DNA of 64,000 bases. Source: Ascidiella aspersa. Taxonomy: Eukaryota. Position 1 is the first letter of the stretch, and each line of letters begins with the position of its first letter. The translations under genes were made by a program, and so were the position numbers. The notes beneath the pieces were generated by a model. It saw only the letters and a list, made by a program, of their open reading frames with translations, did no database searches and had not been told where the DNA came from. The stretch lies in the NCBI GenBank assembly GCA_963924565.1, contig OZ004608.1, positions 28,582,001-28,646,000 on the forward strand, read 5' to 3'. This document shows, piece by piece, positions 36,883 to 50,600 of this stretch.

Positions 36883-38052
36883 CTCTATACACCTTTATAG
36901 TTCTACGTACAGCGAGCTTCAATAATAATTAAATAGCTTCTTCCTATAAGATGCCAAAACAGCGACACTAATACATTGGTTGAAGTGTCTCCAAGCTAAA
37001 ACTGATTGTTTTTGTAGAATCCTCGAAATATATCTTTGTAAATCCAAAAAGGTTTAGTTTCTGCTTTCACAAATGAAATTTACCAATGGCTTTTAACGCA
37101 ATTTTGTTTATCATTTTTTAACAACCTTGGTATTTATGTATGGTTCGAATGATAAAATTGATAATAGTTCCCCAACCGGGAACCATTGCAGGTTGTACAC
37201 CTATGTGCGTAATCCCTACTTCTCCAACATTTGCGTTTGGTTTCAATTTCGTAACTTGGCAGACGCCCTCAACACATGGTGTCGTTTAATAAGGTTGCTG
37301 TAATGTAGAGTCTCACACTGGTGAATAAGTTACATTCGTAGAACTAGGTTAGATGCCGCTTAAAATCAACCGTTGAAATAGGCGTTTATGTTTATTGGCG
37401 CGCTTCATGTAACTAAACCTACTGAAGCGCAATACATCACGCAGAATTATTTTGTGTTTGTTTTTTTTTTGCTTAATTATGGAGAAAATACCGATATTAA
37501 AAGAGCATGTTGTGACGTATACCAGAATACTTCACTACGTCAGTAAACAGCCGGGTAAATTGTAGTAGTAACTTGATTACCTCCCCACACTTGTCATAAA
37601 CACATGTCATAAACAACACTTGTCATAAACAATACTTAAATTTTAAATTGCTTGGTAAATCTGTTCATCAATTAACAAGCCATTTTTTAACTCATTAGTA
37701 GCTAAAACCTTAAAGCTAAACAAAATAAAGATGAACTGCTGTAAAAACATTCCTATATTCTTAATGCGTGTGAAACCAATGAAAAAATATTTAAGAAGTT
37801 AGATCCTTTAAGATATTTTTTTAGAAGATAAAGATATGACACTCATATATACCACCCGATTCGATTTGTTTTTAACGCTTGTAGCGTTCGTATTAGGATA
37901 ATTCGGGGCTTTGAAGCGTCTGTGTTAGAATATGTGTTAGAAATTAGACGCTTTAAGCGGACCGTATAAGAACAGGATACAGGCGAACAGCGAATGCGCA
38001 GCCTAATCATGCATAACGAAACGTTGCCAAGCGATGCAAACTACAGATTTTT

Positions 38053-38661
38053 CACCCCATCCGTCAGAAATCAGTGCAGTTCTAAGCAAAAAGGTCTACG
38101 GCAATCAGTGCATTCAAAGGATCAAAAAGTCCGACTTTTAGACTTTGAGGTCTTGGACAATGCACTAATTTGCATTAACAAATGTGCATAAGAAGATTAA
38201 GTTTAACAATACTTGACCCCACCAAACCCAAACGCTAACCAGCGCCCTAACCCAAATAATGTGCGATAATTTAATAATTATAACGCTTCAGGCCCCAATA
38301 CCTCAATTTGTGACGTAAAAATCTTAAATACAATGGACGAGAAACCATCCGAGTTTGGGCTTTTTCCCCCAGCATTTAAATAATTATTGAAATAACGCAC
38401 ATTATTTGGGTTAGGATTCGGGTTAGCGTTAGGGTTTAGGTGGGTCAAGTGTTATTAATCCTATCTCATATTTTTTGTTATCTTTTCTGAACTTTTAATG
38501 AATATTTTTAATTTATCTTCGCCGGGAGTTTACCTAAAGGTCCAAATCAGTGCATTGCCAGGACCTCAAGGTCTAAAAGTCTAGACTTTTCTGCCATTGG
38601 ATGCCCTGATTGTCGTAGACCTTTTTGCTTAGAAATGCACTGATTTCTAACGGATCGGGTG
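38053..38661. mobile_element. Nested palindromic MITE in the left arm, same terminal motif as the host element
   Basis: TIR CACCCCATCCGTCAGAAATCAGTGCA / TGCACTGATTTCTAACGGATCGGGTG; 7-bp TSD GATTTTT; absent from the right arm (empty site ~48555); internal CCCTAAC/GTTAGGG-rich inverted repeats. Confidence 0.88.
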
Positions 38662-39526
38662 GATTTTTTATCTTGTACAGTTTTGGATATTAGAAATGCA
38701 GAAATGTTTATAACTGTACCAAGTTAATGCGATGTTTATAATTTTACCCAGTAAATAGAAGGTTAAAAGCTTTTATTGTTGCTAAAGCCTACCTTAGCGA
38801 ACATTATTTGGGTTAGGGTGCGGGTTAGCGTGTCGGTTTGGGTATAGGTTAAGCAATACTATTAATAATAATACTTGAACCACCCTTACCCCAGCCTGAA
38901 AAGTATAACAGAACACGCGGGTACAAATTCGGGTGACTAGGTGCAAGTGCAACAAAGTTAAAAAAGGGCGCTGGTCTAGAATCCTACCACATTATTAAAT
39001 CAACGCACAATATTAGAGTTAGGGGCGGCGAGAGTTAGTGTTTGGATGTGGGTGAGTCAAGTATTCTTATATTTATTTTTAACTCTAACCAAAATAATGT
39101 GCGTTGTGGTAGGACTTTAGACCAGCACGAAAAATGTGCATCTCTGGTCTGCTTTCAAATTTTCAGACTTCCACGTTATGATTTTCTCATGCACTCTGTA
39201 TTGCATACATTGCACTGTAAACATAATAGGGTGCACGAACGTTTTACATGTTTAGGGTGTAGTTCAGATTTTTTTCTGGGTGCACTTGTCATACTTTCCA
39301 CAGTGGCCCCCACCCAAACAGTCCAGCGCCAATACTTTTATTGTTGCTAAAGCTAATAATGCTGTTTCTGGCTATTGACTTTCATTGCAAGTTTTATTAG
39401 TTAAAAGACAATATTATTTACATTTACAATGCTAGAAAATATTAGTTGTAGCTAATTTACTTCATTATAATAAACTTAGTTAGCAAATAGAGCAATCAGG
39501 TGGCACTGTATAAAGACAAATTGGAT

Positions 39527-39664
39527 TTGATTCTCGACAAGCTTTCGCACAACCGTGCTTCATCAGGTCAAATTGATTCTCGACAAGCTTTCGCACAACC
39601 GTGCTTCATCAGGTCAAATTGATTCTCAACAAGCTTTCGCACAACCGTGCTTTATCACGTCAAA
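39527..39664 (-). ncRNA. Three tandem 46-nt minimal type-I hammerhead ribozyme motifs (left-arm copy)
   Basis: Reverse complement of 47549-47686. Two units have an intact CTGATGA..GAAA core and one has GTGATAA. Enclosed by ~39-bp inverted repeats (39485-39711). Confidence 0.75.
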
Positions 39665-42600
39665 ATGATATACAATTTGTCTTTATACAGTGCCACCTGA
39701 TTTCTCTATTTAGAATTAGACAAATACGGCCATATACAAAGATTAGTTAGCAAAATATATGCCAAGGAATATTAAATTAGATAAGAAGACCTTTGTTTTG
39801 CAACTTATTTTCTAAAATTTGGTCACCATTGTAATGTAAAGTAAGTCCTAGGTAGTATACATGTTTCAAATATTATAAATTGAAGCCAATATTTTGGTGT
39901 TAAATTTAACTTTAACAATTGGCTATTGTTATAGTGCATATTGCATCTAGTTTGCATTCTGTGGCAGATGCATACCAAATATTTTTAGAGCAATTTGTGT
40001 GCACACCTCAATAACTAAATTGCACACTTCAGAAAAGGTTGTGTTGCAGTAGGATTTCAAACTTCAGTTCTGCCAAAATATGTCTGCACATCTGGAAAGT
40101 TGGTGATGTATGTCAGATATCTGTGCATCGCACATTCTTTTTATCACATTTTAGTGTAAATTTCAAATTTGTGGCATAAAAATCTTAAGGTCCGAAAATA
40201 TGTTACTTCCTTCTGTTCATGGTGGTCTGAAGGCATACAACCAAACTAATAAAAACTCATGAATATTATTAGCTGTAAAAGTGTTGTAGTGATCTCAAGT
40301 TGATAAAAAATAGCTGCTGCATAAGGTTGCGAAGTTGTAGCGAATAGTGCCTAATAAATTTAAATTTAATATTTCACTACCTTAATTGACCTTACTTTTT
40401 AACATTTTTGCATTCTTAACTTTTTCCATTAAGGTCATATACAAGTCATGATTTTAAATAAAATTTTGAACTTAAGTTGTTTATTATCTATAAGCTGCTT
40501 TAAGTTTAATATTACAGAATTTAATTAAATATTATCATGCCTGGCCAAATTAATTTATATTTTTGTTTTTCATTATTAAAAATGTTTTTAGCATTTTATA
40601 TAATTCCTAGATGTAATATTTCAGTCAACCCCCAAAATTAAGGACTTTGTAAGGTGAAAGTGCAAGTAAAAAGATGTCTCTGAAAGTGTTAAGTAACCTT
40701 TAAATCATTGGAAAAGCTCTCTGCATCAAGTCTACACCCATTTGACAAAGAAACAGCTTCAGTTTCCATCCCCACTAACAAACCTTTGTGCACGGAAGTT
40801 AGAGAAAAGGTAATTTCCATTTTGTGTGTTGTGAATTCCAAAACATTAATGTTTACCAGCACTTCCCAACCCGTGGCCAATGGTTTCCAGGTACCAAACT
40901 CGAAAATGTTTTTTCAATTATTTTTTATAACGACTTGGCTAATTTAGTCCACAGTTATTAAAATATGTAACCAATAAACAAGGCCTATTTAATAAAAACA
41001 TGCAAGTAGTTCAGGAGAAATATATGTATATCTAACATTTTTAGTGTTGTCTAGTGTCGACAAGGGAGTCCAATCATCTAACAAGGAGAAACAACTAGCG
41101 ATGAACTCGTGGTGTCTATGTGCAAAAAATCATACAGTGATGAAGAAAAGGACAAACATTTAAATGTGTAATTATTCTAGACCGGTGGTTACTGTATAGT
41201 TACCCCGCATCATTTTACACAATCGTTCGTGATCGCGCCGCTTAAAACTGCACATGGTAAAATAAACAGATTTGGAAAATCATATCCAAAATGGCCCATT
41301 GATTGAGTTATAGTTCCTAACAGGCCGTTTAAAATACCGGAAATGCGATAATTTATTGAAAGATTTTATGGACTACGTATGCTACATTTATTACGCACCA
41401 CATTGTGCAATTTTGGAAAAACATATAAATAGTTTCCTGCTTTACTACACTCTGATTATGTTTTTGTGCCTTGTTTTTAGCTATTAGTGCTTTAATGTGA
41501 GTTTAATAAAATAAAAACACAACGGTTATGTGTTCCAGTGTTGGTTGACTACAAAAACTAAGTCCACTTACAAATAACAGTATTTTTGTTAGCTGATTTT
41601 TACGCATTTTGCGTTTCGTCCTTAGTATTAAAAAAAGAGGCCGAACAGTGTATTAAAATAAATAATTTTATTAATTACTACATTCAAATTATGTCCGTGT
41701 TGGGTCGTTCCTTGTTCTACAATTGACGATTAAAAATCAAGCAATATATCCACCGCACAACGCAGTAAATCAAAACGTGAATTGAGCACACATTTTTGTA
41801 GTGGTTTATCGTGATATTTATTGATTCGATCTATATTTGCCCCTATGATTTCGTTGTATCTGGTAGGACTCCAATGGTCCAGCCACACGATCGAAATATA
41901 TATTTCGGAATAAAACAAAAATCGGACTAGGACCTTATAATCGTAATAACGTATAAACGGAATATGTCCTAAATACGTCGGAATAAGACTTAACTTGCAG
42001 GAACCAAGCCTACACAAAATTTCACCTAACCCCGCCCGTAGGTACATCACAAACCCTTCTAATAATTTCAACTCTGAAAACAATTTTCAAACCCTAAACA
42101 GGGCCTACAATCGATGCCAAAACAGCGGAGCCTCAACGGCGCCGTTCCATCTAGGGTGCCCAAGCGTCGATACCAAAACAGCCGATGGCCCCTGATCGTC
42201 CCATACCCTCTCCCTACAGTTTTAGACGTTATTTTGGCCATCAAACGCCCTGTTTTAATAAATTTAGGACTTTCCGGCGGGTATGTGTGTTGTTCAGGCG
42301 ATTTAGATCTTATTCTGTCGTGGAAATTAGGCCTACTGCGTATTTGGCTTTATTATGTCGTTGATCTTCATACTATGGTATTATAGATTTTTGTGCTTAA
42401 TGTATTTTTGCTTTGTAGTTATTATTGTATGTTCCCATCTGATTCCTATAAAACTGTCTTAAATGGTGCCAAGGTGTAATGACTGTTAGCGATGGATACA
42501 ATCGTGTTTATACTTTTAATAGCTTACGTTACAACATGTTGGTCACCTCGGACAAACTTCCGACGTCAACCTGGTTTTAAAATGGCCATATGCCTGAAAA

Positions 42601-42898
42601 AATCCATCTCTTTAGGTTTTAATACTGTTAGCACTGCTGTATTGAGACATTGTTTTAACTACGTGTGACGAAACCAAACTAAACAATTATGGTTTGTTCA
42701 GTGAGAACATATTATTGACTTGCGTCTAAAAGTTGTTCACAATATTTGTCCAAAGTTAAAAAGCTTAGTATTAATGCACATTTCAACATACTAAACCATG
42801 CATATTAAAGATTTTCATCCTGGCAGCTGCACAGCCGACAATTGTCTGCGAGAGCCTGTGGCTGTTTTAATTCTCATGTACACGTTTTGAGTATACCA

Positions 42899-44215
42899 GT
42901 ACACAAAGTGTACTTCGGTTAAAAATGAGTTACTTTTACATTTGTAGAAGATATAAACACAATGATACTTGTGCAAAAACTGTTTGTTTACATTTCGTAC
43001 CTTGTCCGTAATTTTAATTTCGCGCTGACTGTTGCAAAGCTAACTTTCTCACGGTTGTACCTTTTAAATGCCTTTGATCCGCGTTAAGTACAGAAAAGTT
43101 TTTCAAGTTGGAAAATTAAAATAACCCATTTGTGGGAGAAATATAAACTGAGATGTTTGGTAAAACAACAGTTCGTTCAACTCTTTTCGTTTGACAGTAA
43201 TTTGACTGCGCGTTAAAGTTCGCTAGGCTGACTTTTCGCACAGGGTCGTGCCTCATAAATGCTTATGAAGCACGCTTAGTACAGAAGCATTTTTCAAGTT
43301 GGAAAATTAAAAATTACACATTTGTAAAATACATATAAACTGAGATGTTTCGTAAAACAACTGTTCGTTTAACTCTTTTCGTTTGGCAGTAATTTGATTG
43401 CGCGTTGAAGGTCGCAAAGCTGACTTTTCGCACATAGTAGTGCATTATAAATGCTTATGATGCGCGCTTAGTACAGGAGAATTTTTCAAGTTGGAAAATT
43501 AAAAATTACACATTTGTAAAAGACTTATAAACTGAGATGTTTCGTAAAACAACTGTTCGTTTAACTCTTTTCGTTTGGCAGTAATTTGATTGCGCGTTAA
43601 AGTTCGCAAAGCTGACTTTTCGCACAGGGTCGTGCGTTATAAATGCTTATGAAGCGTGCTTAGTACAGAAGCATTTTTCAAGTTGGAAAATTAAAAATTA
43701 CACATTTGTAAAAGACGTATAAACTGAGATGTTTCGTAAAACAACTGTTCGTTTAACTCTTTTCGTTTGGCAGTAATTTGATTGCGCGTTAAAGTTCGCT
43801 AGGCTGACTTTTCGCACAGGGTCGTGCCTCATAAATGCTTATGAAGCGCGCTTAGTACAGAAGCATTTTTCAAGTTGGAAAATTAAAAATTACACATTTG
43901 TAAAATATATATAAACTGAGATGTTTCGTAAAACAACTGTTCGTTTAACTCTTTTCGTTTGGCAGTAATTTGATTGCATGTTAAAGTTCGCAAAGCTGAT
44001 TTTTCGCACAGGGTCGTGCCTTATAAATGCTTATGAAGCGCGCTTAGTACAGAAGCATTTTTCAAGTTGGAAAATTAAACATTACACATTTGTAAAAGAC
44101 GTATAAACTGAGATGTTTCGTAAAACAACTGTTCGTTTAACTCTTTTCGTTTGGAAGAAATTTGATTGCGCGTTAAAGGTCGCAAAGCTAACTTTTCGCA
44201 CTTGATTCGTACAGA
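42899..44215. repeat. 192-bp tandem array (~7 units) in the foldback spacer
   Basis: GTACAG anchors at 43088, 43279, 43471, 43663, 43855 and 44047; a more diverged unit starts at ~42899; no ORF of 60 aa or more in the track. Confidence 0.95.
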
Positions 44216-44297
44216 AGTGTTTCTGAATTTAACCTCGTAATAAAAAGTGCTCATCTTCTGTTTAACTAGACGAATGAATTTTCTTCCATAAATGGGT

Positions 44298-44402
44298 AAG
44301 TTTTAGATTTCCAGCTTAAAAGCACTGCAGTATAAGGGCGCATTATACGCATTCCTAAGTCACTTTATACTACAGTGCTTTTAAGCTGGAAATCTAAAAC
44401 TT
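44298..44402. repeat. Small hairpin (~38-bp arms) in the foldback spacer
   Basis: AAGTTTTAGATTTCCAGCTTAAAAGCACTGCAGTATAA / TTATACTACAGTGCTTTTAAGCTGGAAATCTAAAACTT. Confidence 0.85.
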
Positions 44403-47400
44403 TTAAGCTGGAATTAAAAACGTCGGCTGTGCAGCTGCCAGGATGAAAATCTTTAATAGGCATGGTTTAGTATGTTGAAATGTGCATTAATACTACGCTT
44501 TTTACCTTTTGACAAATATTGTGAACAACAATATTTTTAGACGCAAGTCAATAACATGTTCTCATTGAACAAACCATAATTGTTTAGTTTGGTTTCGTTA
44601 CACGTAGTTAGAACAATGTCTCAATACAGCAGTGCTAACAGTATTAAAACCTTAAGAGATGGATTTTTTCAGGCATATGGCCATTTTAAAACCAGGTTGA
44701 CGTCGGAAGTTTGTCCGAGGTGACCAACATGTTGTAACGTAAGCTATGAAGAATATAAACACGATTGTATCCATCGCTAACAGTCATTACACCTTGGCAC
44801 CATTTAAGACAGTTTTATAGGAATCAGATGGGAACATACAATAATAACTACAAAGCAAAACCAACGACATAATAAAGCCAAATACGCAGTAGGCCTAATA
44901 CCCACGACAGAATAAGATCTAAACCGCCTGAATAACACACATACCCGCCAGAAAGTCCTAAATTCATCGAAACAGGGCGTTTGATGGCCAAAATAACGTC
45001 TGAAACTGGAAGGAGAGTGTATGGGACGATCAGGGCCATCGGTTGTTTTGGTGTCGACGCTTGGGCACCCTAGATGGAACGGCGCCGTTAAAGCTCCGCT
45101 GTTTTAGCATCGATTGTAGGCCCTGTTTAGGGTTAGAAAATTGTTTTCAGAGTTGAAATTATTAGAAGGTTTGTGATGTACCTACGGGCGGCAAATTTTG
45201 TATAGGCTTGGTTCTTTCTTGCAAGTTAAATCTTATTCCGACGCATTTAGGACATATTCCGTTTATACGTTATTATTACGAGTGTTAGGTCCTAGTCCGA
45301 TTTTTGTTTTATTCCGAAATATATATTTCGATCTTGTGGCTGGACCATTGGAGTCCAGATACAACGAAATCATAGGGGCAAATATAGATCGAATCAAAAA
45401 ATATCACGATAAACCACTACAAAAATGTGTGCTCAATTCTCGTTTTGATTTACTGCGTTGTGCGGTGGATATATTGCTTGATTTTTAATCGTCAATTGTA
45501 GAACAAGGAACGACCCAACACGGACATAATTTGAATGTAGTAATTAATAAAATTATTTATTTTAATACACTGTTCGGCCTCTTTTTTTAATACTAAGGAC
45601 GAAACGCAAAATGCGTAAAAATCAGCTAACAAAAATACTGTTATTTGTAAGTGGACTTAGTTTTTGTAGTCAACCAACACTGGAACAAATAACCGTTGCT
45701 TTTTATTTTATTAAACTCACATTTAAAGCACTAATAGCTAAAAACAAGACACAAAAACATAATCAGAGTGTAGTAAAGCAGGAAACTATTTATATGTTTT
45801 TCCAAAATTGCACAATGTGGTGCGTAATAAATGTAGCATACGTAGTCCATAAAATCTTTCAATAAATTATCGCATTCCGGGTATTTTAAACGGCCTGTTA
45901 GGAACTATAACTCAATCAATGGGCCATTTTCGATATGATTTTCCAAATCTGTTTATTTTACCATGTGCAGTTTTAAGCGGCGCGATCACGAACGATTGTG
46001 TAAAATGATGCGGGGTAACTATACAGTAACCACCGGTCTAGAATAATTACACATTTAAATGTTCGTCCTTTTCTTCATCACTGTATGATTTTTTGCACAT
46101 AGGCACCACGAGTTCATCGCTAGTTGTTTCTCCTTGTTAGATGATTGGACTCCCTTGTCGACACTAGACAATACTAAAAATGTTAGATATACATATATTT
46201 CTCCTGAACTACTTGCATGTTTTTATTAAATAGGCCTTGTTTATTGGTTACATATTTTAATAACTGTGGACTAAATTAGCCAAGTCGTTATAAAAGATAA
46301 TTGAAAAAACATTTTCGAGTTTGGTACCTGGAAACCATTGGCCACGGGTTGGGAAGTGCTGGTAAACATTAATGTTTTGGAATGCACAACACACAAAATG
46401 GAAATTACCTTTTCTCTAAATTCCGTGCACAAAGGTTTGTTAGTGGGGATGGAAACTGAAGCTGTTTCTTTGTCAAATGGGTGTAGACTTGATGCAGAGA
46501 GCTTTTCCAATGATTTAAAGGTTACTTAACACTTTCAGAGACATCTTTTTACTTGCACTTTCACAAAGTCCTTAATTTTGGGGGTTGACTGAAATATTAC
46601 ATCTAGGAATTATATAAAATGCTAAAAACATTTTTAATAATGAAAAACAAAAATATAAATTAATTTGGCCAGGCATGATAATATTTAATTAAATTCTGTA
46701 ATATTAAACTTAAAGCAGCTTATAGATAATAAACAACTTAAGTTCAAAATTTTATTTAAAATCATGACTTGTATATGACCTTAATGGAAAAAGTTAAGAA
46801 TGCAAAAATGTTAAAAAGTAAGGTCAATTAAGGTAGTGAAATATGAAATTTAAATTTATTGGGCACTATTCGCTACAACTTCGCAACCTTATGCAGCAGC
46901 TATTTTTTATCAACTTGAGATCACTACAACACTTTTACAGCTAATAATATTCATGAGTTTTTATTAGTTTGGTTGTTTGCCTTCAGACCACCATGAACAG
47001 AAGGAAGTAACATATTTTCGGACCTTAAGATTTTTATCCCACAAATTTGAAATTTACACTAAAATGTGATAAAAAGAATGTGCGATGCACAGATATCTGA
47101 CATACATCACCAACTTTCCAGATGTGCAGACATATTTTGGCAGAACTGAAGTTTGAAATCCTACTGCAATACAACCTTTTCTGAAGTGTGCAATTTAGTT
47201 ATTGAGGTGTGCACACAAATTGCTTTAAAAATATTTGGTATGCATCTGCCACAGAATGCAAACTAGATGCAATATGCACCATAACAAGAGCCAATTGTTA
47301 AAGTTAAATTTAACACCAAAATATTGGCTTCAATTTAAAATATTTGAAACATGTATACTACCTAGGACTTACTTTACATTATAATGGTGACCAAATTTTA

Positions 47401-47548
47401 GAAAATAAGTTGCAAAACAAAGGTCTTCTTATCTAATTTAATATTCCTTGGCATATATTTTGCTAACTAATCTTTGTATATGGCCGTATTAGTCTAATTC
47501 TAAATAGAGGAATCAGGTGGCACTGTATAAAGACAAATTGTATATCAT

Positions 47549-47686
47549 TTTGACCTGATAAAGCACGGTTGTGCGAAAGCTTGTCGAGAATCAATTTGAC
47601 CTGATGAAGCACGGTTGTGCGAAAGCTTGTCGAGAATAAATTTGACCTGATGAAGCACGGTTGTGCGAAAGCTTGTCGGGAATCAA
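47549..47686 (+). ncRNA. Three tandem 46-nt minimal type-I hammerhead ribozyme motifs (right-arm copy)
   Basis: Unit TTTGAC-CTGATGA-A-GCAC(GGTT)GTGC-GAA-AG/CT-T-GTCGAG-AATCAA. Cores at 47555 (CTGATAA, mutated), 47601 and 47647. Stem I UUUGAC:GUCGAG; palindromic AGCU stem III. 39-bp inverted repeats at 47502-47540 / 47690-47728. Confidence 0.8.
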
Positions 47687-50600
47687 ATTCAATTTGTATT
47701 TATACAGTGCCACCTGATTCCTCTATTTGCTAACTAAGTTTATTATAATGAAGTAAATTAGCTACAACTAATATTTTCTAGCATTGTAAATGTAAATAAT
47801 ATTGTCTTTTAACTAATAAAACTTCGGAATGAAAGTCAATAGCCAGAAACAGCATTATTAGCTTTAGCAACAATAAAAGTATTGGCGCTGGACTGTTTGG
47901 GAGGGGGCCACTGTGGAAAGTATGGCAAGTGCACCCAGAAAAAAATCTGAACTGCACCCTAAACATGTAAAACGTTCGTGCACCCTATTATGTTTACAGT
48001 GCAATGTATGCAATACAGAGTGCATGAGAAAATCATAACGTGGAAGTCTGAAAATTTGAAAGCAGACCAAAGATGCAGTTTTTCGTGCTGGTCTAAAGTC
48101 CTACCACAACGCACATTATTTTGGTTAGGATTAAAAATAAATATAAGAATACTTGACCCACCGACATCCAAACACTAACTCTCGCCGCCCCTAACCCTAA
48201 TATTGTGCGTTGATTTAATAATGTGGTAGGATTGTAGACCAGCGCCCTTTTTTAACTTTGTTGCACTTGCACCTAGTCACCCGAATTTTTTCGGCATTGT
48301 ACCCGCGTGTTCTGTTATACTTTCCAGGTTGGGGTAAGGGTGGTTCAAGTATTATTATTAATAGTATTGCTTAACCTATACCCAAACCGACACGCTAACC
48401 CGCACCCTAACCCAAATAATGTTCACTAAGGTAGGCTTTAGCAACAATAAAAGCTTTTAACCTTCTATTTACTGGGTAAAATTATAAACATCGCATTAAC
48501 TTGGTACAGTTATAAACATTTCTGCATTTCTAATATCCAAAACTGTACAAGATAAAAAATCTGTAGTCTGCATCGCTTGGCAACGTTTCGTTATGCATGA
48601 TTAGGCTACGCATTCGCTGTTCGCCTGTATCCTGTTCTTATACGGTCCGCTTAAAGCGTCTAATTTCTAACACATATTCTAACACAGACGCTTCAAAGCC
48701 CCGAATTGTCGTAATACGAACGCTACAAGCGTTGAAAACAAATCGAATCGGGTGTATATACAGAAGTTGAAAGCGATAACTTTGAACCATAAAAGGTCAA
48801 ACAAAATACCATATGTACATAAATATAACACTGGATCGTATATTCAAGTTACACTCAAAAGCTGTAGAAACTTGGAGTAAGGTGTAGAGTAATGTTTATG
48901 CGTGAATCATAAATAGCTAACTTTCGAAAATAGCAAATATTTTTGGTATTTAAATTAAACAATGCTAATTTCCATGATTTGGAATGAAGCTTAGAAATAT
49001 CTTTACTAACGGAATTTTATTTGTTGTCCTGTCATGGGTTAAAAACATCGTTTTTTTAAACCATGCAGTTGTCCAAAATAATGTTGCATCACAGTTAAAC
49101 AGTATGCGGTATAAGACAATAATTTAAAAATTAACAAACGCGAGCTATAACACACTTTTAAATAGGAATTAAATGTTGGAACAGAGAAATCATTTTAATT
49201 TTATAAGGCTTATCATTTTCATTACAATATTGTGTTTCGTGGTTTATTTTTATATCAGGGAAATTTCAATTTTTTGTCGATTCAGCAATGTTTTACAAAA
49301 CAATTTACAGACAACCCGTAGAAGAAAGTTTACAGGCTTTCATTGATTTGAGGATACCCGATTTAAATTAACTATAACGCTTCACCTATAAAATATCATA
49401 ATGGTAGAGTTGATGTCACGTTGTGAGTGAGCAAACCCGTTTGCTGATGAGTTGAGCACTTTATCACCAACTGAACCATTCCAGTCTGTGGATTTAAGTA
49501 AAGATGAAATAACAGTGCCAAGCTATTTGCAATAAGCTAAATAATAAAATTTCTTACTTATTGAGGTGAATGTCGCCTCTGGCGAATATTACCAGAGTGG
49601 TTATTTTACCTTTTTGTTTATAGTTATTCAAAGCGCAAGCTCGATTAGGTGCACATAAAGATATACCTTAAAAACGCTTTTTAGCTGATTGCAAATTGAA
49701 TGACATTGTGGTTAATGTTAATTTCATCGAGTTTTAGAGTCATACTGTTCCCCAAGTGTTACTTCATTCGGCTAGTGTTTTGCGTGCTAAGTTTATAACA
49801 ATTTAGACAAAAACAAACAATAAGTTTCACACAAAAAATCATGTCTAACTTACTAAGAAAATCATTGCAGTCATCTCTATCAACTGAGGTGCTATTCCTG
49901 ACACCGCCGATGCAAGCAAACTCTCCATAACAGCTATCAACTCTACAAAATAATTTAATACAATTATGTTTGGAAAAGACAGACACGCCCAATTAAAAAT
50001 GAAAAATAAACTCAAAAGTTAGTAACTCGAGGATGGTTAATCGCATATGAGTGGCATTTTAGCGTTTGTTGTTGATATGTTGTCAAACTTATTTTATATA
50101 TATATATATATTGAACAACGTTTGCTCCACGTGTAATTTAAATCAAGAGTAAAATCGCTAGAACAACTAGTTAACTAACTTCACTCCAGGGCACATTGCA
50201 TAGGCGCTTCCAGAAATCCCGTAGCTCCAAATTGTAGAAAACCAGGAGTAACTTTAAACAATGAAGGTGGAATTGTGGAGTTGAGAACATCTTTACCGGT
50301 TGATATTGTGACAGGAACAACAAAACCGTCCGAAGAACTGCATCCGGGAACTGCATTACAACAGTAACGGTTGTTAAAGTGACTTCCATTTTGGGCGATG
50401 ATAATATATTTTGCAAAATACCTATATTTTCCACTCCAGCCACAATCTCCAATATCTTTGCCATTGAGTTTTTTATTTGAGACTCTGTTACCAATTTACC
50501 ACCAGTTCTATAAAAAAAAAAACTTAATCACACTTTTGTTTAGCAGTTATCCTATGTAGTTTTTCAAACCTGGAAAACATGTTGTAGCCTACTAAAATGT

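What the first reader, a model, noticed from the sequence alone, without database searches (positions are those of the whole stretch)
47459..47737. Tandem array of three 46-nt minimal hammerhead ribozymes in an inverted-repeat cassette
Seen: three head-to-tail units containing almost nothing but a type-I hammerhead. Each has stem I UUUGAC/GUCGAG, core CUGAUGA plus one extra A, stem II GCAC-GGUU-GUGC, GAAA, a zero-loop palindromic stem III (AGCU) and a predicted CUU cleavage triplet (after ~47628 and ~47674). Unit 1 has G8>A. The array is enclosed by 39-bp inverted repeats and flanked by a 12-bp direct repeat TTTGCTAACTAA (47459-47470, 47726-47737), a possible TSD. Established: such minimal hammerheads occur in Penelope-like retroelements and animal retrozymes and cleave as dimers via the palindromic stem III. 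Inference: adjacent units supply the dimer partner in cis and would release a 46-nt monomer that could circularise. This would be an extremely small ribozyme-only retro-mobilised unit, here carried by a DNA transposon.
Basis: partly seen in the sequence, partly recalled or inferred. Interest (0 to 1): 0.9.

Follow-up and report, generated by a model that had tools for sequence, protein, structure and literature searches.

The report
Truncated Penelope insertion with amplified hammerhead
The three 46-nt hammerhead units are real, but they lie in an ordinary, severely truncated head-to-head insertion of a Penelope-like retrotransposon, and the tandem array arose locally at this one insertion rather than moving as a 46-nt ribozyme element.

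Summary
There is a 46-nt x 3.1 tandem array at 47544-47686. Each unit is a minimal type-I hammerhead, and unit 1 has G8>A. The array lies between 48-nt inverted arms and a true 12-bp target-site duplication.

The cassette (47471-47725) is not a DNA transposon. It is two 5'-truncated 3' ends of a Penelope-like element (PLE) joined head to head. One arm carries the 34-nt PLE "tail". Thirty independent family members range from 158 to 2171 bp. All have the tail on exactly one arm and most have TSDs of about 12 bp. The longer members encode GIY-YIG and RT + GIY-YIG.

The hammerhead matches the published PLE "min-HHR" feature for feature. About 1000 copies are in the genome.

Every same-strand tandem hammerhead pair in the genome lies in a paralogue of this one insertion. 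That insertion was copied along with a roughly 11-kb palindromic repeat, and unit number varies from 1 to 5 between paralogues. There are also 14 paralogous empty sites. So nothing shows that a 46-nt unit is mobile.

RNA reads show low family expression and no read ends piled at the predicted cleavage sites. The scan's first readers noted similar PLE-hammerhead palindromes elsewhere in this genome.

Verdict: a new member of a known kind, of low to moderate interest.

The parts
47459..47470 (.). Left copy of the 12-bp target-site duplication TTTGCTAACTAA
   Evidence: Direct repeat found. Fourteen paralogous empty sites hold a single copy. An empty-site joint 47458>47726, with 12 letters fitting both sides, appears in 3 RNA reads and one contig.
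47471..47504 (-). 34-nt PLE 'tail' extension at the outer end of the left arm (sense strand is the - strand)
   Evidence: Present at exactly one end of each of 30 independent family members. Its length and one-sided presence match the 30-40 bp PLE tail described in PMC8557442 and PMC11167929.
47505..47548 (-). Left arm: the terminal ~46-nt segment of the PLE 3' end, 5'-truncated before reaching the hammerhead
   Evidence: Inverted repeat with 47681-47728. In other copies the same arm continues into an antisense hammerhead and the PLE 3'UTR/ORF.
47549..47588 (+). Hammerhead unit 1, core CUGAUAA (G8>A); predicted cleavage after 47582
   Evidence: The G8>A change is shared by the first unit in all paralogues.
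47595..47634 (+). Hammerhead unit 2, identical to the family's commonest form; predicted cleavage after 47628
   Evidence: 83 identical copies among the loci held.
47641..47680 (+). Hammerhead unit 3, 3' strand of stem I reads GUCGGG (U-A becomes U.G); predicted cleavage after 47674
47680..47725 (+). Right arm distal segment (terminal 46 nt of the PLE 3' end, without tail)
47726..47737 (.). Right copy of the 12-bp TSD
39476..39754 (-). Second copy of the same cassette with its TSDs (three hammerhead units on the - strand at 39532-39664), in the other arm of the large palindrome
   Evidence: 97% over all 279 nt; inverted arms 39389-40650 / 46563-47824.
37853..48754 (.). Host sequence: a ~11-kb palindromic (foldback-like) multi-copy repeat, with arms ~37853-42839 and ~44422-48754 and a central 192-nt tandem repeat, into which the PLE fragment inserted
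   Evidence: Inverted cassette pairs 7-8 kb apart lie on C9, C4, C2 and C6. Some copies have one arm filled and the other empty.

Best explanation
The cassette 47471-47725 is a dead-on-arrival insertion of a Penelope-like retroelement (PLE).

Inferred insertion mechanism, taken from published PLE biochemistry. The PLE RT/GIY-YIG protein nicked both strands of an AT-rich target about 12 bp apart. Each nick primed reverse transcription on PLE RNA from one of two internal start sites, one of them 34 nt further downstream, which gives the 'tail'. The two very short cDNAs were joined head to head. The result is a left arm of tail plus 46-nt terminal segment, a right arm of hammerhead plus 46-nt terminal segment, and a 12-bp TSD.

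The hammerhead is the family's own minimal type-I ribozyme. It sits about 50 nt from the 3' end of the element's RNA, and published work indicates that this class acts as a dimer.

At this one insertion, the 40-nt hammerhead plus a 6-nt spacer was later amplified in tandem, or amplified during insertion. Unit number has since drifted between 1 and 5 among paralogues. This happened while the host ~11-kb palindromic repeat spread the insertion to at least 17 arms.

If the + strand of the array is transcribed, neighbouring units could pair through AGCU/AGCU into a cis double hammerhead and cut out 46-nt pieces. That last step is possible but not shown.
For: Family ends and TSDs: independent copies share precise ends and have different flanking duplications. 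In 30 independent elements of 158-2171 bp, the 34-35-nt tail is on exactly one arm in 30 of 30, and a TSD of 11 bp or more (modal 12) is found in 25 of 30.

PLE identity: longer members have inverted arms of 390-445 nt around a GIY-YIG coding end (Pfam E 4.4e-8). A 2.2-kb member has a 488-aa frame with RVT_1 + GIY-YIG, and the nearest Atlas clusters carry the same domain set.

Literature match: an inverted 5'-truncated copy and a 30-40-bp tail at one end are PLE hallmarks (PMC8557442). The PLE protein cuts and extends both strands, uses two internal RT start sites and prefers AT-rich targets (PMC11167929). [quoted passage not shown]

Insertion status: 14 empty paralogous sites.

Array restricted to one lineage: 23 of 23 and 15 of 15 tandem junctions fall in founder paralogues, with 1, 2, 3 or 5 units.

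The cis double hammerhead is nested and evaluates to -16.0 kcal/mol.
Against: No intact full-length copy of this PLE family was found. The RT part has one good copy and a few broken ones, so the source of the enzyme is not identified.

The double-strand priming model is taken from an Anolis PLE studied in vitro. It was not tested for this family.

Whether the first duplication of the unit happened at the DNA level or by RT template switching cannot be told from the sequence.

Hammerhead activity is unproven:
- Rfam models do not score it.
- The predicted MFE of two units is a competing 12-bp inter-unit duplex at -25.9 kcal/mol.
- No excess of read ends appears at the cleavage sites (only about 6% of one run was read).
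- Conservation of the core (97.4%) is barely above that of the adjacent arm (96.4%), so it reflects youth rather than visible selection.
Confidence: 0.85

Rival explanations
1. One reading: the 46-nt hammerhead is itself a minimal retro-mobilised (retrozyme-like) unit that multiplies through RNA, cleaving as a cis dimer and circularising. Here it rides as cargo in a DNA transposon with terminal inverted repeats and a TSD.
For: The array, inverted arms and TSD exist. Adjacent units can form a nested double hammerhead. Non-LTR retrozyme families with consensus lengths as short as 51 bp, related to PLE pLTRs, have been reported (preprint 10.64898/2026.07.22.740005).
Against: All tandem junctions in the genome lie in paralogues of one insertion that share the same TSD and flanks. 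Copy number varies within that lineage, as expected for DNA-level expansion and contraction.

The 'TIRs' are PLE 3' ends. They are asymmetric (tail at one end only), and element length is continuous from 158 to 2171 bp with RT/EN coding remnants. No transposase was found. No array-specific RNA or cleavage ends were seen.
Confidence: 0.05
2. The short (~160-260 bp) cassettes are a discrete non-autonomous SINE-like or retrozyme-monomer family. They are copied as a unit from master copies and mobilised in trans by a PLE, rather than each arising as an independent double truncation.
For: Many copies cluster at 158-176 bp, and in the sampled short copies the tailed arm is always the one lacking the hammerhead. 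Non-autonomous PLE derivatives are known (PMC8557442; preprint).
Against: The inner junction between the two arms differs in nearly every copy, so they do not descend from one master. Lengths grade continuously into ORF-bearing copies. The apparent asymmetry is at least partly ascertainment, because the copies were found with this cassette as the query.
Confidence: 0.1

Closest known systems
Minimal hammerhead ribozymes (min-HHR) of metazoan Penelope-like elements (Cervera & de la Pena 2014, PMC4209133)
   Same: Type-I topology. Core CUGAUGA...GAAA. One unpaired nucleotide between A9 and G10.1. G10.1-C11.1 closing pair. Palindromic 15.2/16.2 (G-C) with no loop 3, so helix III can form only between two units. 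Location in the terminal repeat of a PLE. Dual motifs on opposite strands 100-700 bp apart. Hundreds to thousands of mostly solitary copies per genome.
   Different: Helix II is short (4 bp with a GGUU loop) and helix I is 6 bp. This is closer to canonical metazoan type-I motifs than to the 7-8 bp helix II and 4-5 bp helix I of the Schistosoma consensus. Copies here are nearly identical to one another (as in D. virilis) rather than highly variable.
Complex inverted/tailed insertions of Penelope-like elements (Craig et al. 2021, PMC8557442; Frangieh et al. 2024, PMC11167929)
   Same: Strong 5' truncation. An inverted 5'-truncated copy abutting the sense copy. A 30-40-bp tail at one end only. 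AT-rich targets. RT + C-terminal GIY-YIG in one frame.
   Different: Here both copies are truncated so far that almost nothing but the hammerhead and the last ~46-80 nt remains. The result looks like a MITE. The TSD is close to a constant 12 bp in this family.
Animal non-LTR retrozymes (Cervera & de la Pena 2020, PMC7229834; Li et al. 2026 preprint 10.64898/2026.07.22.740005)
   Same: Head-to-tail repeats, each holding a type-I hammerhead that needs a neighbour to form helix III. Sequence kinship with a PLE terminal region.
   Different: The unit is 46 nt, below the reported 51-972 bp consensus range and the ~170-400 nt circRNAs. There are only 1-5 units. The array is confined to one insertion lineage. 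No evidence of circular RNA or of independent spread.

Membership tests
Hammerhead ribozyme, minimal type-I (PLE min-HHR) | Conserved core C3 U4 G5 A6 N7 G8 A9 ... G12 A13 A14, A15.1-U16.1, H17 | tested here: met
   Units 2 and 3 read CUGAUGA ... GAAA-GC-U-U. Unit 1 fails at G8 (A).
Hammerhead ribozyme, minimal type-I (PLE min-HHR) | Helices I and II flanking the core, G10.1-C11.1, one extra nucleotide 5' of helix II, palindromic 15.2/16.2 without loop 3 | tested here: met
   UUUGAC/GUCGAG (6 bp including G.U pairs); A bulge; GCAC-GGUU-GUGC; AGCU. Criteria taken from PMC4209133.
Hammerhead ribozyme, minimal type-I (PLE min-HHR) | Score against curated covariance models (Rfam Hammerhead families) | tested here: not met
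   No hit at gathering score or at E<=10. A motif with no helix III hairpin would be expected to score poorly. D. virilis variants likewise escaped the published min-HHR descriptor.
Hammerhead ribozyme, minimal type-I (PLE min-HHR) | Compensatory changes in the helices across copies | tested here: inconclusive
   44 of 66 arms have an identical hammerhead. The few stem I variants are CpG transitions that happen to keep pairing.
Hammerhead ribozyme, minimal type-I (PLE min-HHR) | Site-specific self-cleavage | not testable with these tools
   No pile of RNA read ends at 47582, 47628 or 47674 in one RNA-seq run, of which about 6% was read. This is weak negative evidence only.
Penelope-like element insertion | Single ORF with RT followed by a C-terminal GIY-YIG endonuclease in longer members sharing the same termini | tested here: met
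   RVT_1 (E 3e-10) and GIY-YIG (E 2.3e-7) in one 488-aa frame of L081, flanked by the same hammerhead arms. GIY-YIG in L031.
Penelope-like element insertion | 5' truncation with an adjacent inverted 5'-truncated copy; 30-40-bp tail at one end only | tested here: met
   30 of 30 independent elements have a 34-35-nt tail on exactly one arm; lengths 158-2171 bp.
Penelope-like element insertion | Target-site duplication and a demonstrable empty site | tested here: met
   A 12-bp TSD here and in most copies. 14 empty paralogous sites.
Penelope-like element insertion | Intact autonomous copy of the same family in the genome | tested here: not met
   The longest frame is 488 aa. The RT region has only one 100% copy, and other copies at 85-93% carry stops. 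The search scores only the best candidates, so absence is not proven.
Animal non-LTR retrozyme | Tandem hammerhead-bearing units dispersed to several independent loci and expressed as unit-length circular RNA | tested here: not met
   Tandem junctions occur only in paralogues of one insertion. No array-specific RNA was seen. Circular RNA could not be tested.
MITE / DNA transposon with TIRs | Symmetric terminal inverted repeats reaching both ends; fixed unit length; related transposase-encoding element | tested here: not met
   One end carries a 34-nt extension with no inverted partner. Length is continuous. Internal sequence, where present, is PLE RT/EN.

The most novel reading that the evidence does not exclude
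The 46-nt array is a nascent 'mini-retrozyme' caught at its birth inside a PLE terminal arm. When transcribed, neighbouring units fold into cis double hammerheads, release 46-nt RNAs that are ligated into circles, and could seed a new tandem ribozyme family. It would be smaller than any retrozyme reported so far (51 bp consensus minimum).
Probability: 0.06. Interest if true: 0.65.

Novelty: new member of a known kind. Interest (0 to 1): 0.27.

Why it matters
The result mainly corrects an annotation. A structure that looks like a MITE carrying ribozymes is the minimal footprint of Penelope-type integration: two arms, one tail and a 12-bp TSD. This genome holds about a thousand such hammerheads.

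The regular 'tail at exactly one end' and the TSD of about 12 bp, seen in 30 of 30 and 25 of 30 natural insertions, fit the two-strand, two-start-site model proposed from in vitro work on an Anolis PLE.

The local 1-5-unit amplification shows how a PLE terminal hammerhead can turn into a tandem array. This is the step proposed for the origin of animal retrozymes. Here, however, there is no sign that the array has become mobile or active.

Tried and rejected
- **Rfam.** The whole window at gathering score and 47400-47800 at E<=10 gave no hammerhead hit, only a chance mir-929 match.
- **Cleaved templates.** I tested whether truncated arms end at the hammerhead cleavage site, which would indicate HHR-cleaved templates. 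Inner junctions are scattered (before, at and 3 nt past the site), so I dropped the idea.
- **Selection on the hammerhead.** I compared its identity with that of the adjacent arm: 97.4% against 96.4%, Fisher p = 0.04, with most mismatches at truncation edges. This is not convincing.
- **Other hammerhead families.** A descriptor search of the held loci, meant to find covariation, returned only one unrelated candidate, in L044.
- **Intact PLE.** The search for an intact full-length PLE of this family found none.
- **More copies.** The census therefore rests on 30 independent elements.
- **RNA evidence.** One RNA-seq run showed low coverage coming mostly from longer PLE copies, and no ends at the cleavage sites.
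- **Organism.** Names are coded in the reads tools, so the species is not identified. Atlas neighbours only say 'animal PLE-like'.
- **Consensus.** The only majority string computed was for the ~200-nt non-coding arm, to measure conservation.
Full report
**1. What is in the sequence**

Tandem Repeats Finder reports a 46-nt period, 3.1 copies and 94% matches at 47544-47686. The three 40-nt units lie at 47549-47588, 47595-47634 and 47641-47680, separated by 6-nt spacers (AATCAA, AATAAA).

Each unit reads, 5' to 3':
- UUUGAC (helix I, 5' strand)
- CUGAUGA
- one extra A
- GCAC-GGUU-GUGC (helix II)
- GAAA
- GC
- U16.1
- U17
- GUCGAG (helix I, 3' strand)

Unit 1 has CUGAUAA (G8>A). Unit 3 ends GUCGGG, which turns a U-A pair into U.G. 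Predicted cleavage falls after 47582, 47628 and 47674.

The inverted arms are 48 nt long and 92% complementary (47502-47549 / 47681-47728). The 12-nt direct repeat TTTGCTAACTAA sits at 47459-47470 and 47726-47737.

Rfam gives no hammerhead match, either at gathering score on the whole window or at E<=10 on 47400-47800. That is unsurprising for a motif with no helix III hairpin. The motif is still not a chance match. Its 31-nt core (up to 2 mismatches) occurs 1029 times in the 308.6-Mb genome, 517 forward and 512 reverse. The reversed control gives 0.

**2. The cassette is an insertion with a real TSD**

The full 279-nt stretch, including both 12-mers, recurs at 97-98% identity at several places. 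These often come as inverted pairs 7-8 kb apart. The reason is that the cassette sits in both arms of a large palindromic repeat. Its arms are roughly 37853-42839 and 44422-48754 at 98% identity, and its centre holds a 192-nt tandem repeat. The second cassette copy is at 39476-39754 on the minus strand.

That could have meant the 12-mers are simply part of a larger repeat. They are not. Fourteen other copies of the host repeat carry the uninterrupted target with a single TTTGCTAACTAA. Six of these align continuously across the junction. In several palindromes one arm is filled and the other is empty (C2:25820558 vs 25827241; C7:16793563 vs 16786554; C5; C8). Three RNA reads and one contig also show the empty-site joint 47458>47726, with 12 letters shared by both sides.

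**3. What the cassette is**

Diverged copies at unrelated sites share exact ends and have their own flanking duplications. The left end carries about 34 nt that have no inverted partner at the right end.

Larger members have the layout: tail - arm - antisense hammerhead - internal sequence - sense hammerhead - arm. In the 1.1-1.4-kb members the inverted arms are 390-445 nt long. The unique centre encodes the C-terminus of a GIY-YIG endonuclease (Pfam PF01541, E 4.4e-8, above cutoff). A 2.2-kb member (L081) has a 488-aa open frame with both RVT_1 and GIY-YIG. Its nearest ESM-Atlas clusters are animal proteins with the same RVT_1 / GIY-YIG / HTH_animal set. RT followed by a C-terminal GIY-YIG in one ORF is the Penelope-like element (PLE) architecture.

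In a census of the loci I held, there are 30 independent elements of 158-2171 bp. All 30 have the 34-35-nt extension on exactly one arm. Twenty-five of the 30 have a TSD of at least 11 bp, with 12 the commonest length. The targets are AT-rich.

These are published hallmarks of PLE insertions:
- A high degree of 5' truncation, an inverted 5'-truncated copy adjacent to the sense copy, and a 30-40-bp 'tail' often at only one end (Craig et al. 2021, PMC8557442).
- In vitro, a PLE protein cleaves and extends both DNA strands, starts reverse transcription at two internal sites whose spacing corresponds to the tail, and prefers AT-rich DNA (Frangieh et al. 2024, PMC11167929).

The window's cassette is thus the extreme case. 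Its left arm is the tail plus the last ~46 nt. Its right arm is the hammerhead plus the last 46 nt. The inner junction between arms differs in nearly every copy. This argues for independent truncation events rather than copying of a short master element.

**4. The hammerhead**

It matches the 'min-HHR' that Cervera and de la Pena found in the terminal repeats of metazoan PLEs. [quoted passage not shown] That paper also notes 'dual min-HHRs ... in opposite strands' and mostly solitary copies from truncated PLEs (PMC4209133). It reports low activity in vitro. Frangieh et al. found protein-assisted cleavage and no RNA-seq ends at the cleavage site.

Here 44 of 66 arms carry an identical hammerhead. 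The adjoining arm segment is almost as conserved, 96.4% against 97.4%. The conservation therefore reflects a young family rather than demonstrable selection. The stem I variants seen (GUUGAG, GUCAAG) are CpG transitions.

**5. The tandem array**

Two genome-wide pattern searches looked for a hammerhead 3' end followed by the next hammerhead start on the same strand. They found 23 sites (fixed spacer, up to 3 mismatches) and 15 sites (any 3-33-nt spacer, exact). Every one lies in a paralogue of this same insertion, with the same flanks and the same TSD. Among those paralogues the unit number is 1, 2, 3 or 5.

The array is therefore a local amplification at one founder insertion. It was then carried around by the host palindromic repeat. 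I cannot tell whether the first duplication arose by replication slippage, unequal exchange, or RT template switching at insertion.

No independent insertion carries an array. So nothing indicates that a 46-nt unit is itself retro-mobilised.

**6. Could the array work as proposed?**

Two adjacent units can be drawn as a fully nested double hammerhead. It has an outer helix I between unit A's 5' strand and unit B's 3' strand, and an inner helix I hairpin with the 6-nt spacer as its loop. It also has two helices II and a shared 4-bp AGCU/AGCU helix III.

For units 2+3 this structure evaluates to -16.0 kcal/mol. The predicted minimum-energy fold, at -25.9 kcal/mol, instead pairs the two near-palindromic helix II segments with each other. 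The whole cassette RNA folds into a long hairpin at -98.7 kcal/mol. Tertiary contacts and proteins are not modelled.

In the one RNA-seq run available (coded X4; about 6% read), coverage of the cassette is low. It comes mostly from longer PLE copies: the soft-clipped sequence upstream of UUUGAC matches the PLE 3'UTR seen in L031. No position shows an excess of read starts or ends. Activity therefore remains untested.

**7. Comparison and novelty**

All the structural features are known for PLEs. The only unusual point is the 46-nt tandem repeat of the hammerhead. A 2026 preprint reports non-LTR retrozyme families with consensus lengths of 51-972 bp and shows their kinship with PLE pLTRs (10.64898/2026.07.22.740005). 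The array here looks like the first step of such a transition but has not spread.

The scan's first readers noted many similar PLE-hammerhead palindromes elsewhere in this genome and noted the host foldback separately. I treated these notes as leads only.

I rate this a new member of a known kind, of low to moderate interest.

**8. Limits**

- The species is not identified, because names are coded.
- No intact autonomous copy of this PLE family was found.

Noticed in passing
window 37853-48754: An ~11-kb palindrome with ~5-kb arms at 98% identity and a central array of 192-nt repeats (43050-44166). It has no ORF over 117 aa. It is multi-copy in the genome, with inverted cassette pairs on C2, C4, C6, C7 and C9. 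Some copies have the PLE insertion in one arm only, which suggests arm-to-arm conversion or repeated palindrome formation.
   Followed up: partly
G000:C9:23485959-23494499 (not fetched): Four RT-like open frames of 698-816 aa spaced exactly 2671 bp apart on one strand, 29% identical to the RT of the family studied here. This looks like a head-to-tail tandem of another, possibly intact, retroelement family.
   Followed up: no
L044 (G000:C1:4248700-4249500), minus strand near position 710: A different minimal hammerhead candidate, with core CUGAAGA, a longer helix II, and CG as the palindromic 15.2/16.2 pair. It suggests a second PLE-type hammerhead family in the genome.
   Followed up: no
window 47396-47524 in run X3 (organism B): A contig from a run labelled as a different organism spans the left insertion junction (flank plus tailed arm) with one mismatch (table 8, record 17). 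The founder insertion may therefore be shared with a close relative, or the label may differ for the same species.
   Followed up: no
G000:C8:8490431-8875103: Five near-identical single-hammerhead cassettes (86% to the query) spaced 36-125 kb apart on one strand. They are probably carried by a large segmental or tandem duplication on contig 8.
   Followed up: no
L034 (G000:C3:16820500-16823400): A 248-bp PLE mini-insertion lies nested at the right end of a 1402-bp member of the same family. This suggests PLE insertion into PLE terminal sequence, in line with published homing of PLEs to their own pLTR.
   Followed up: no
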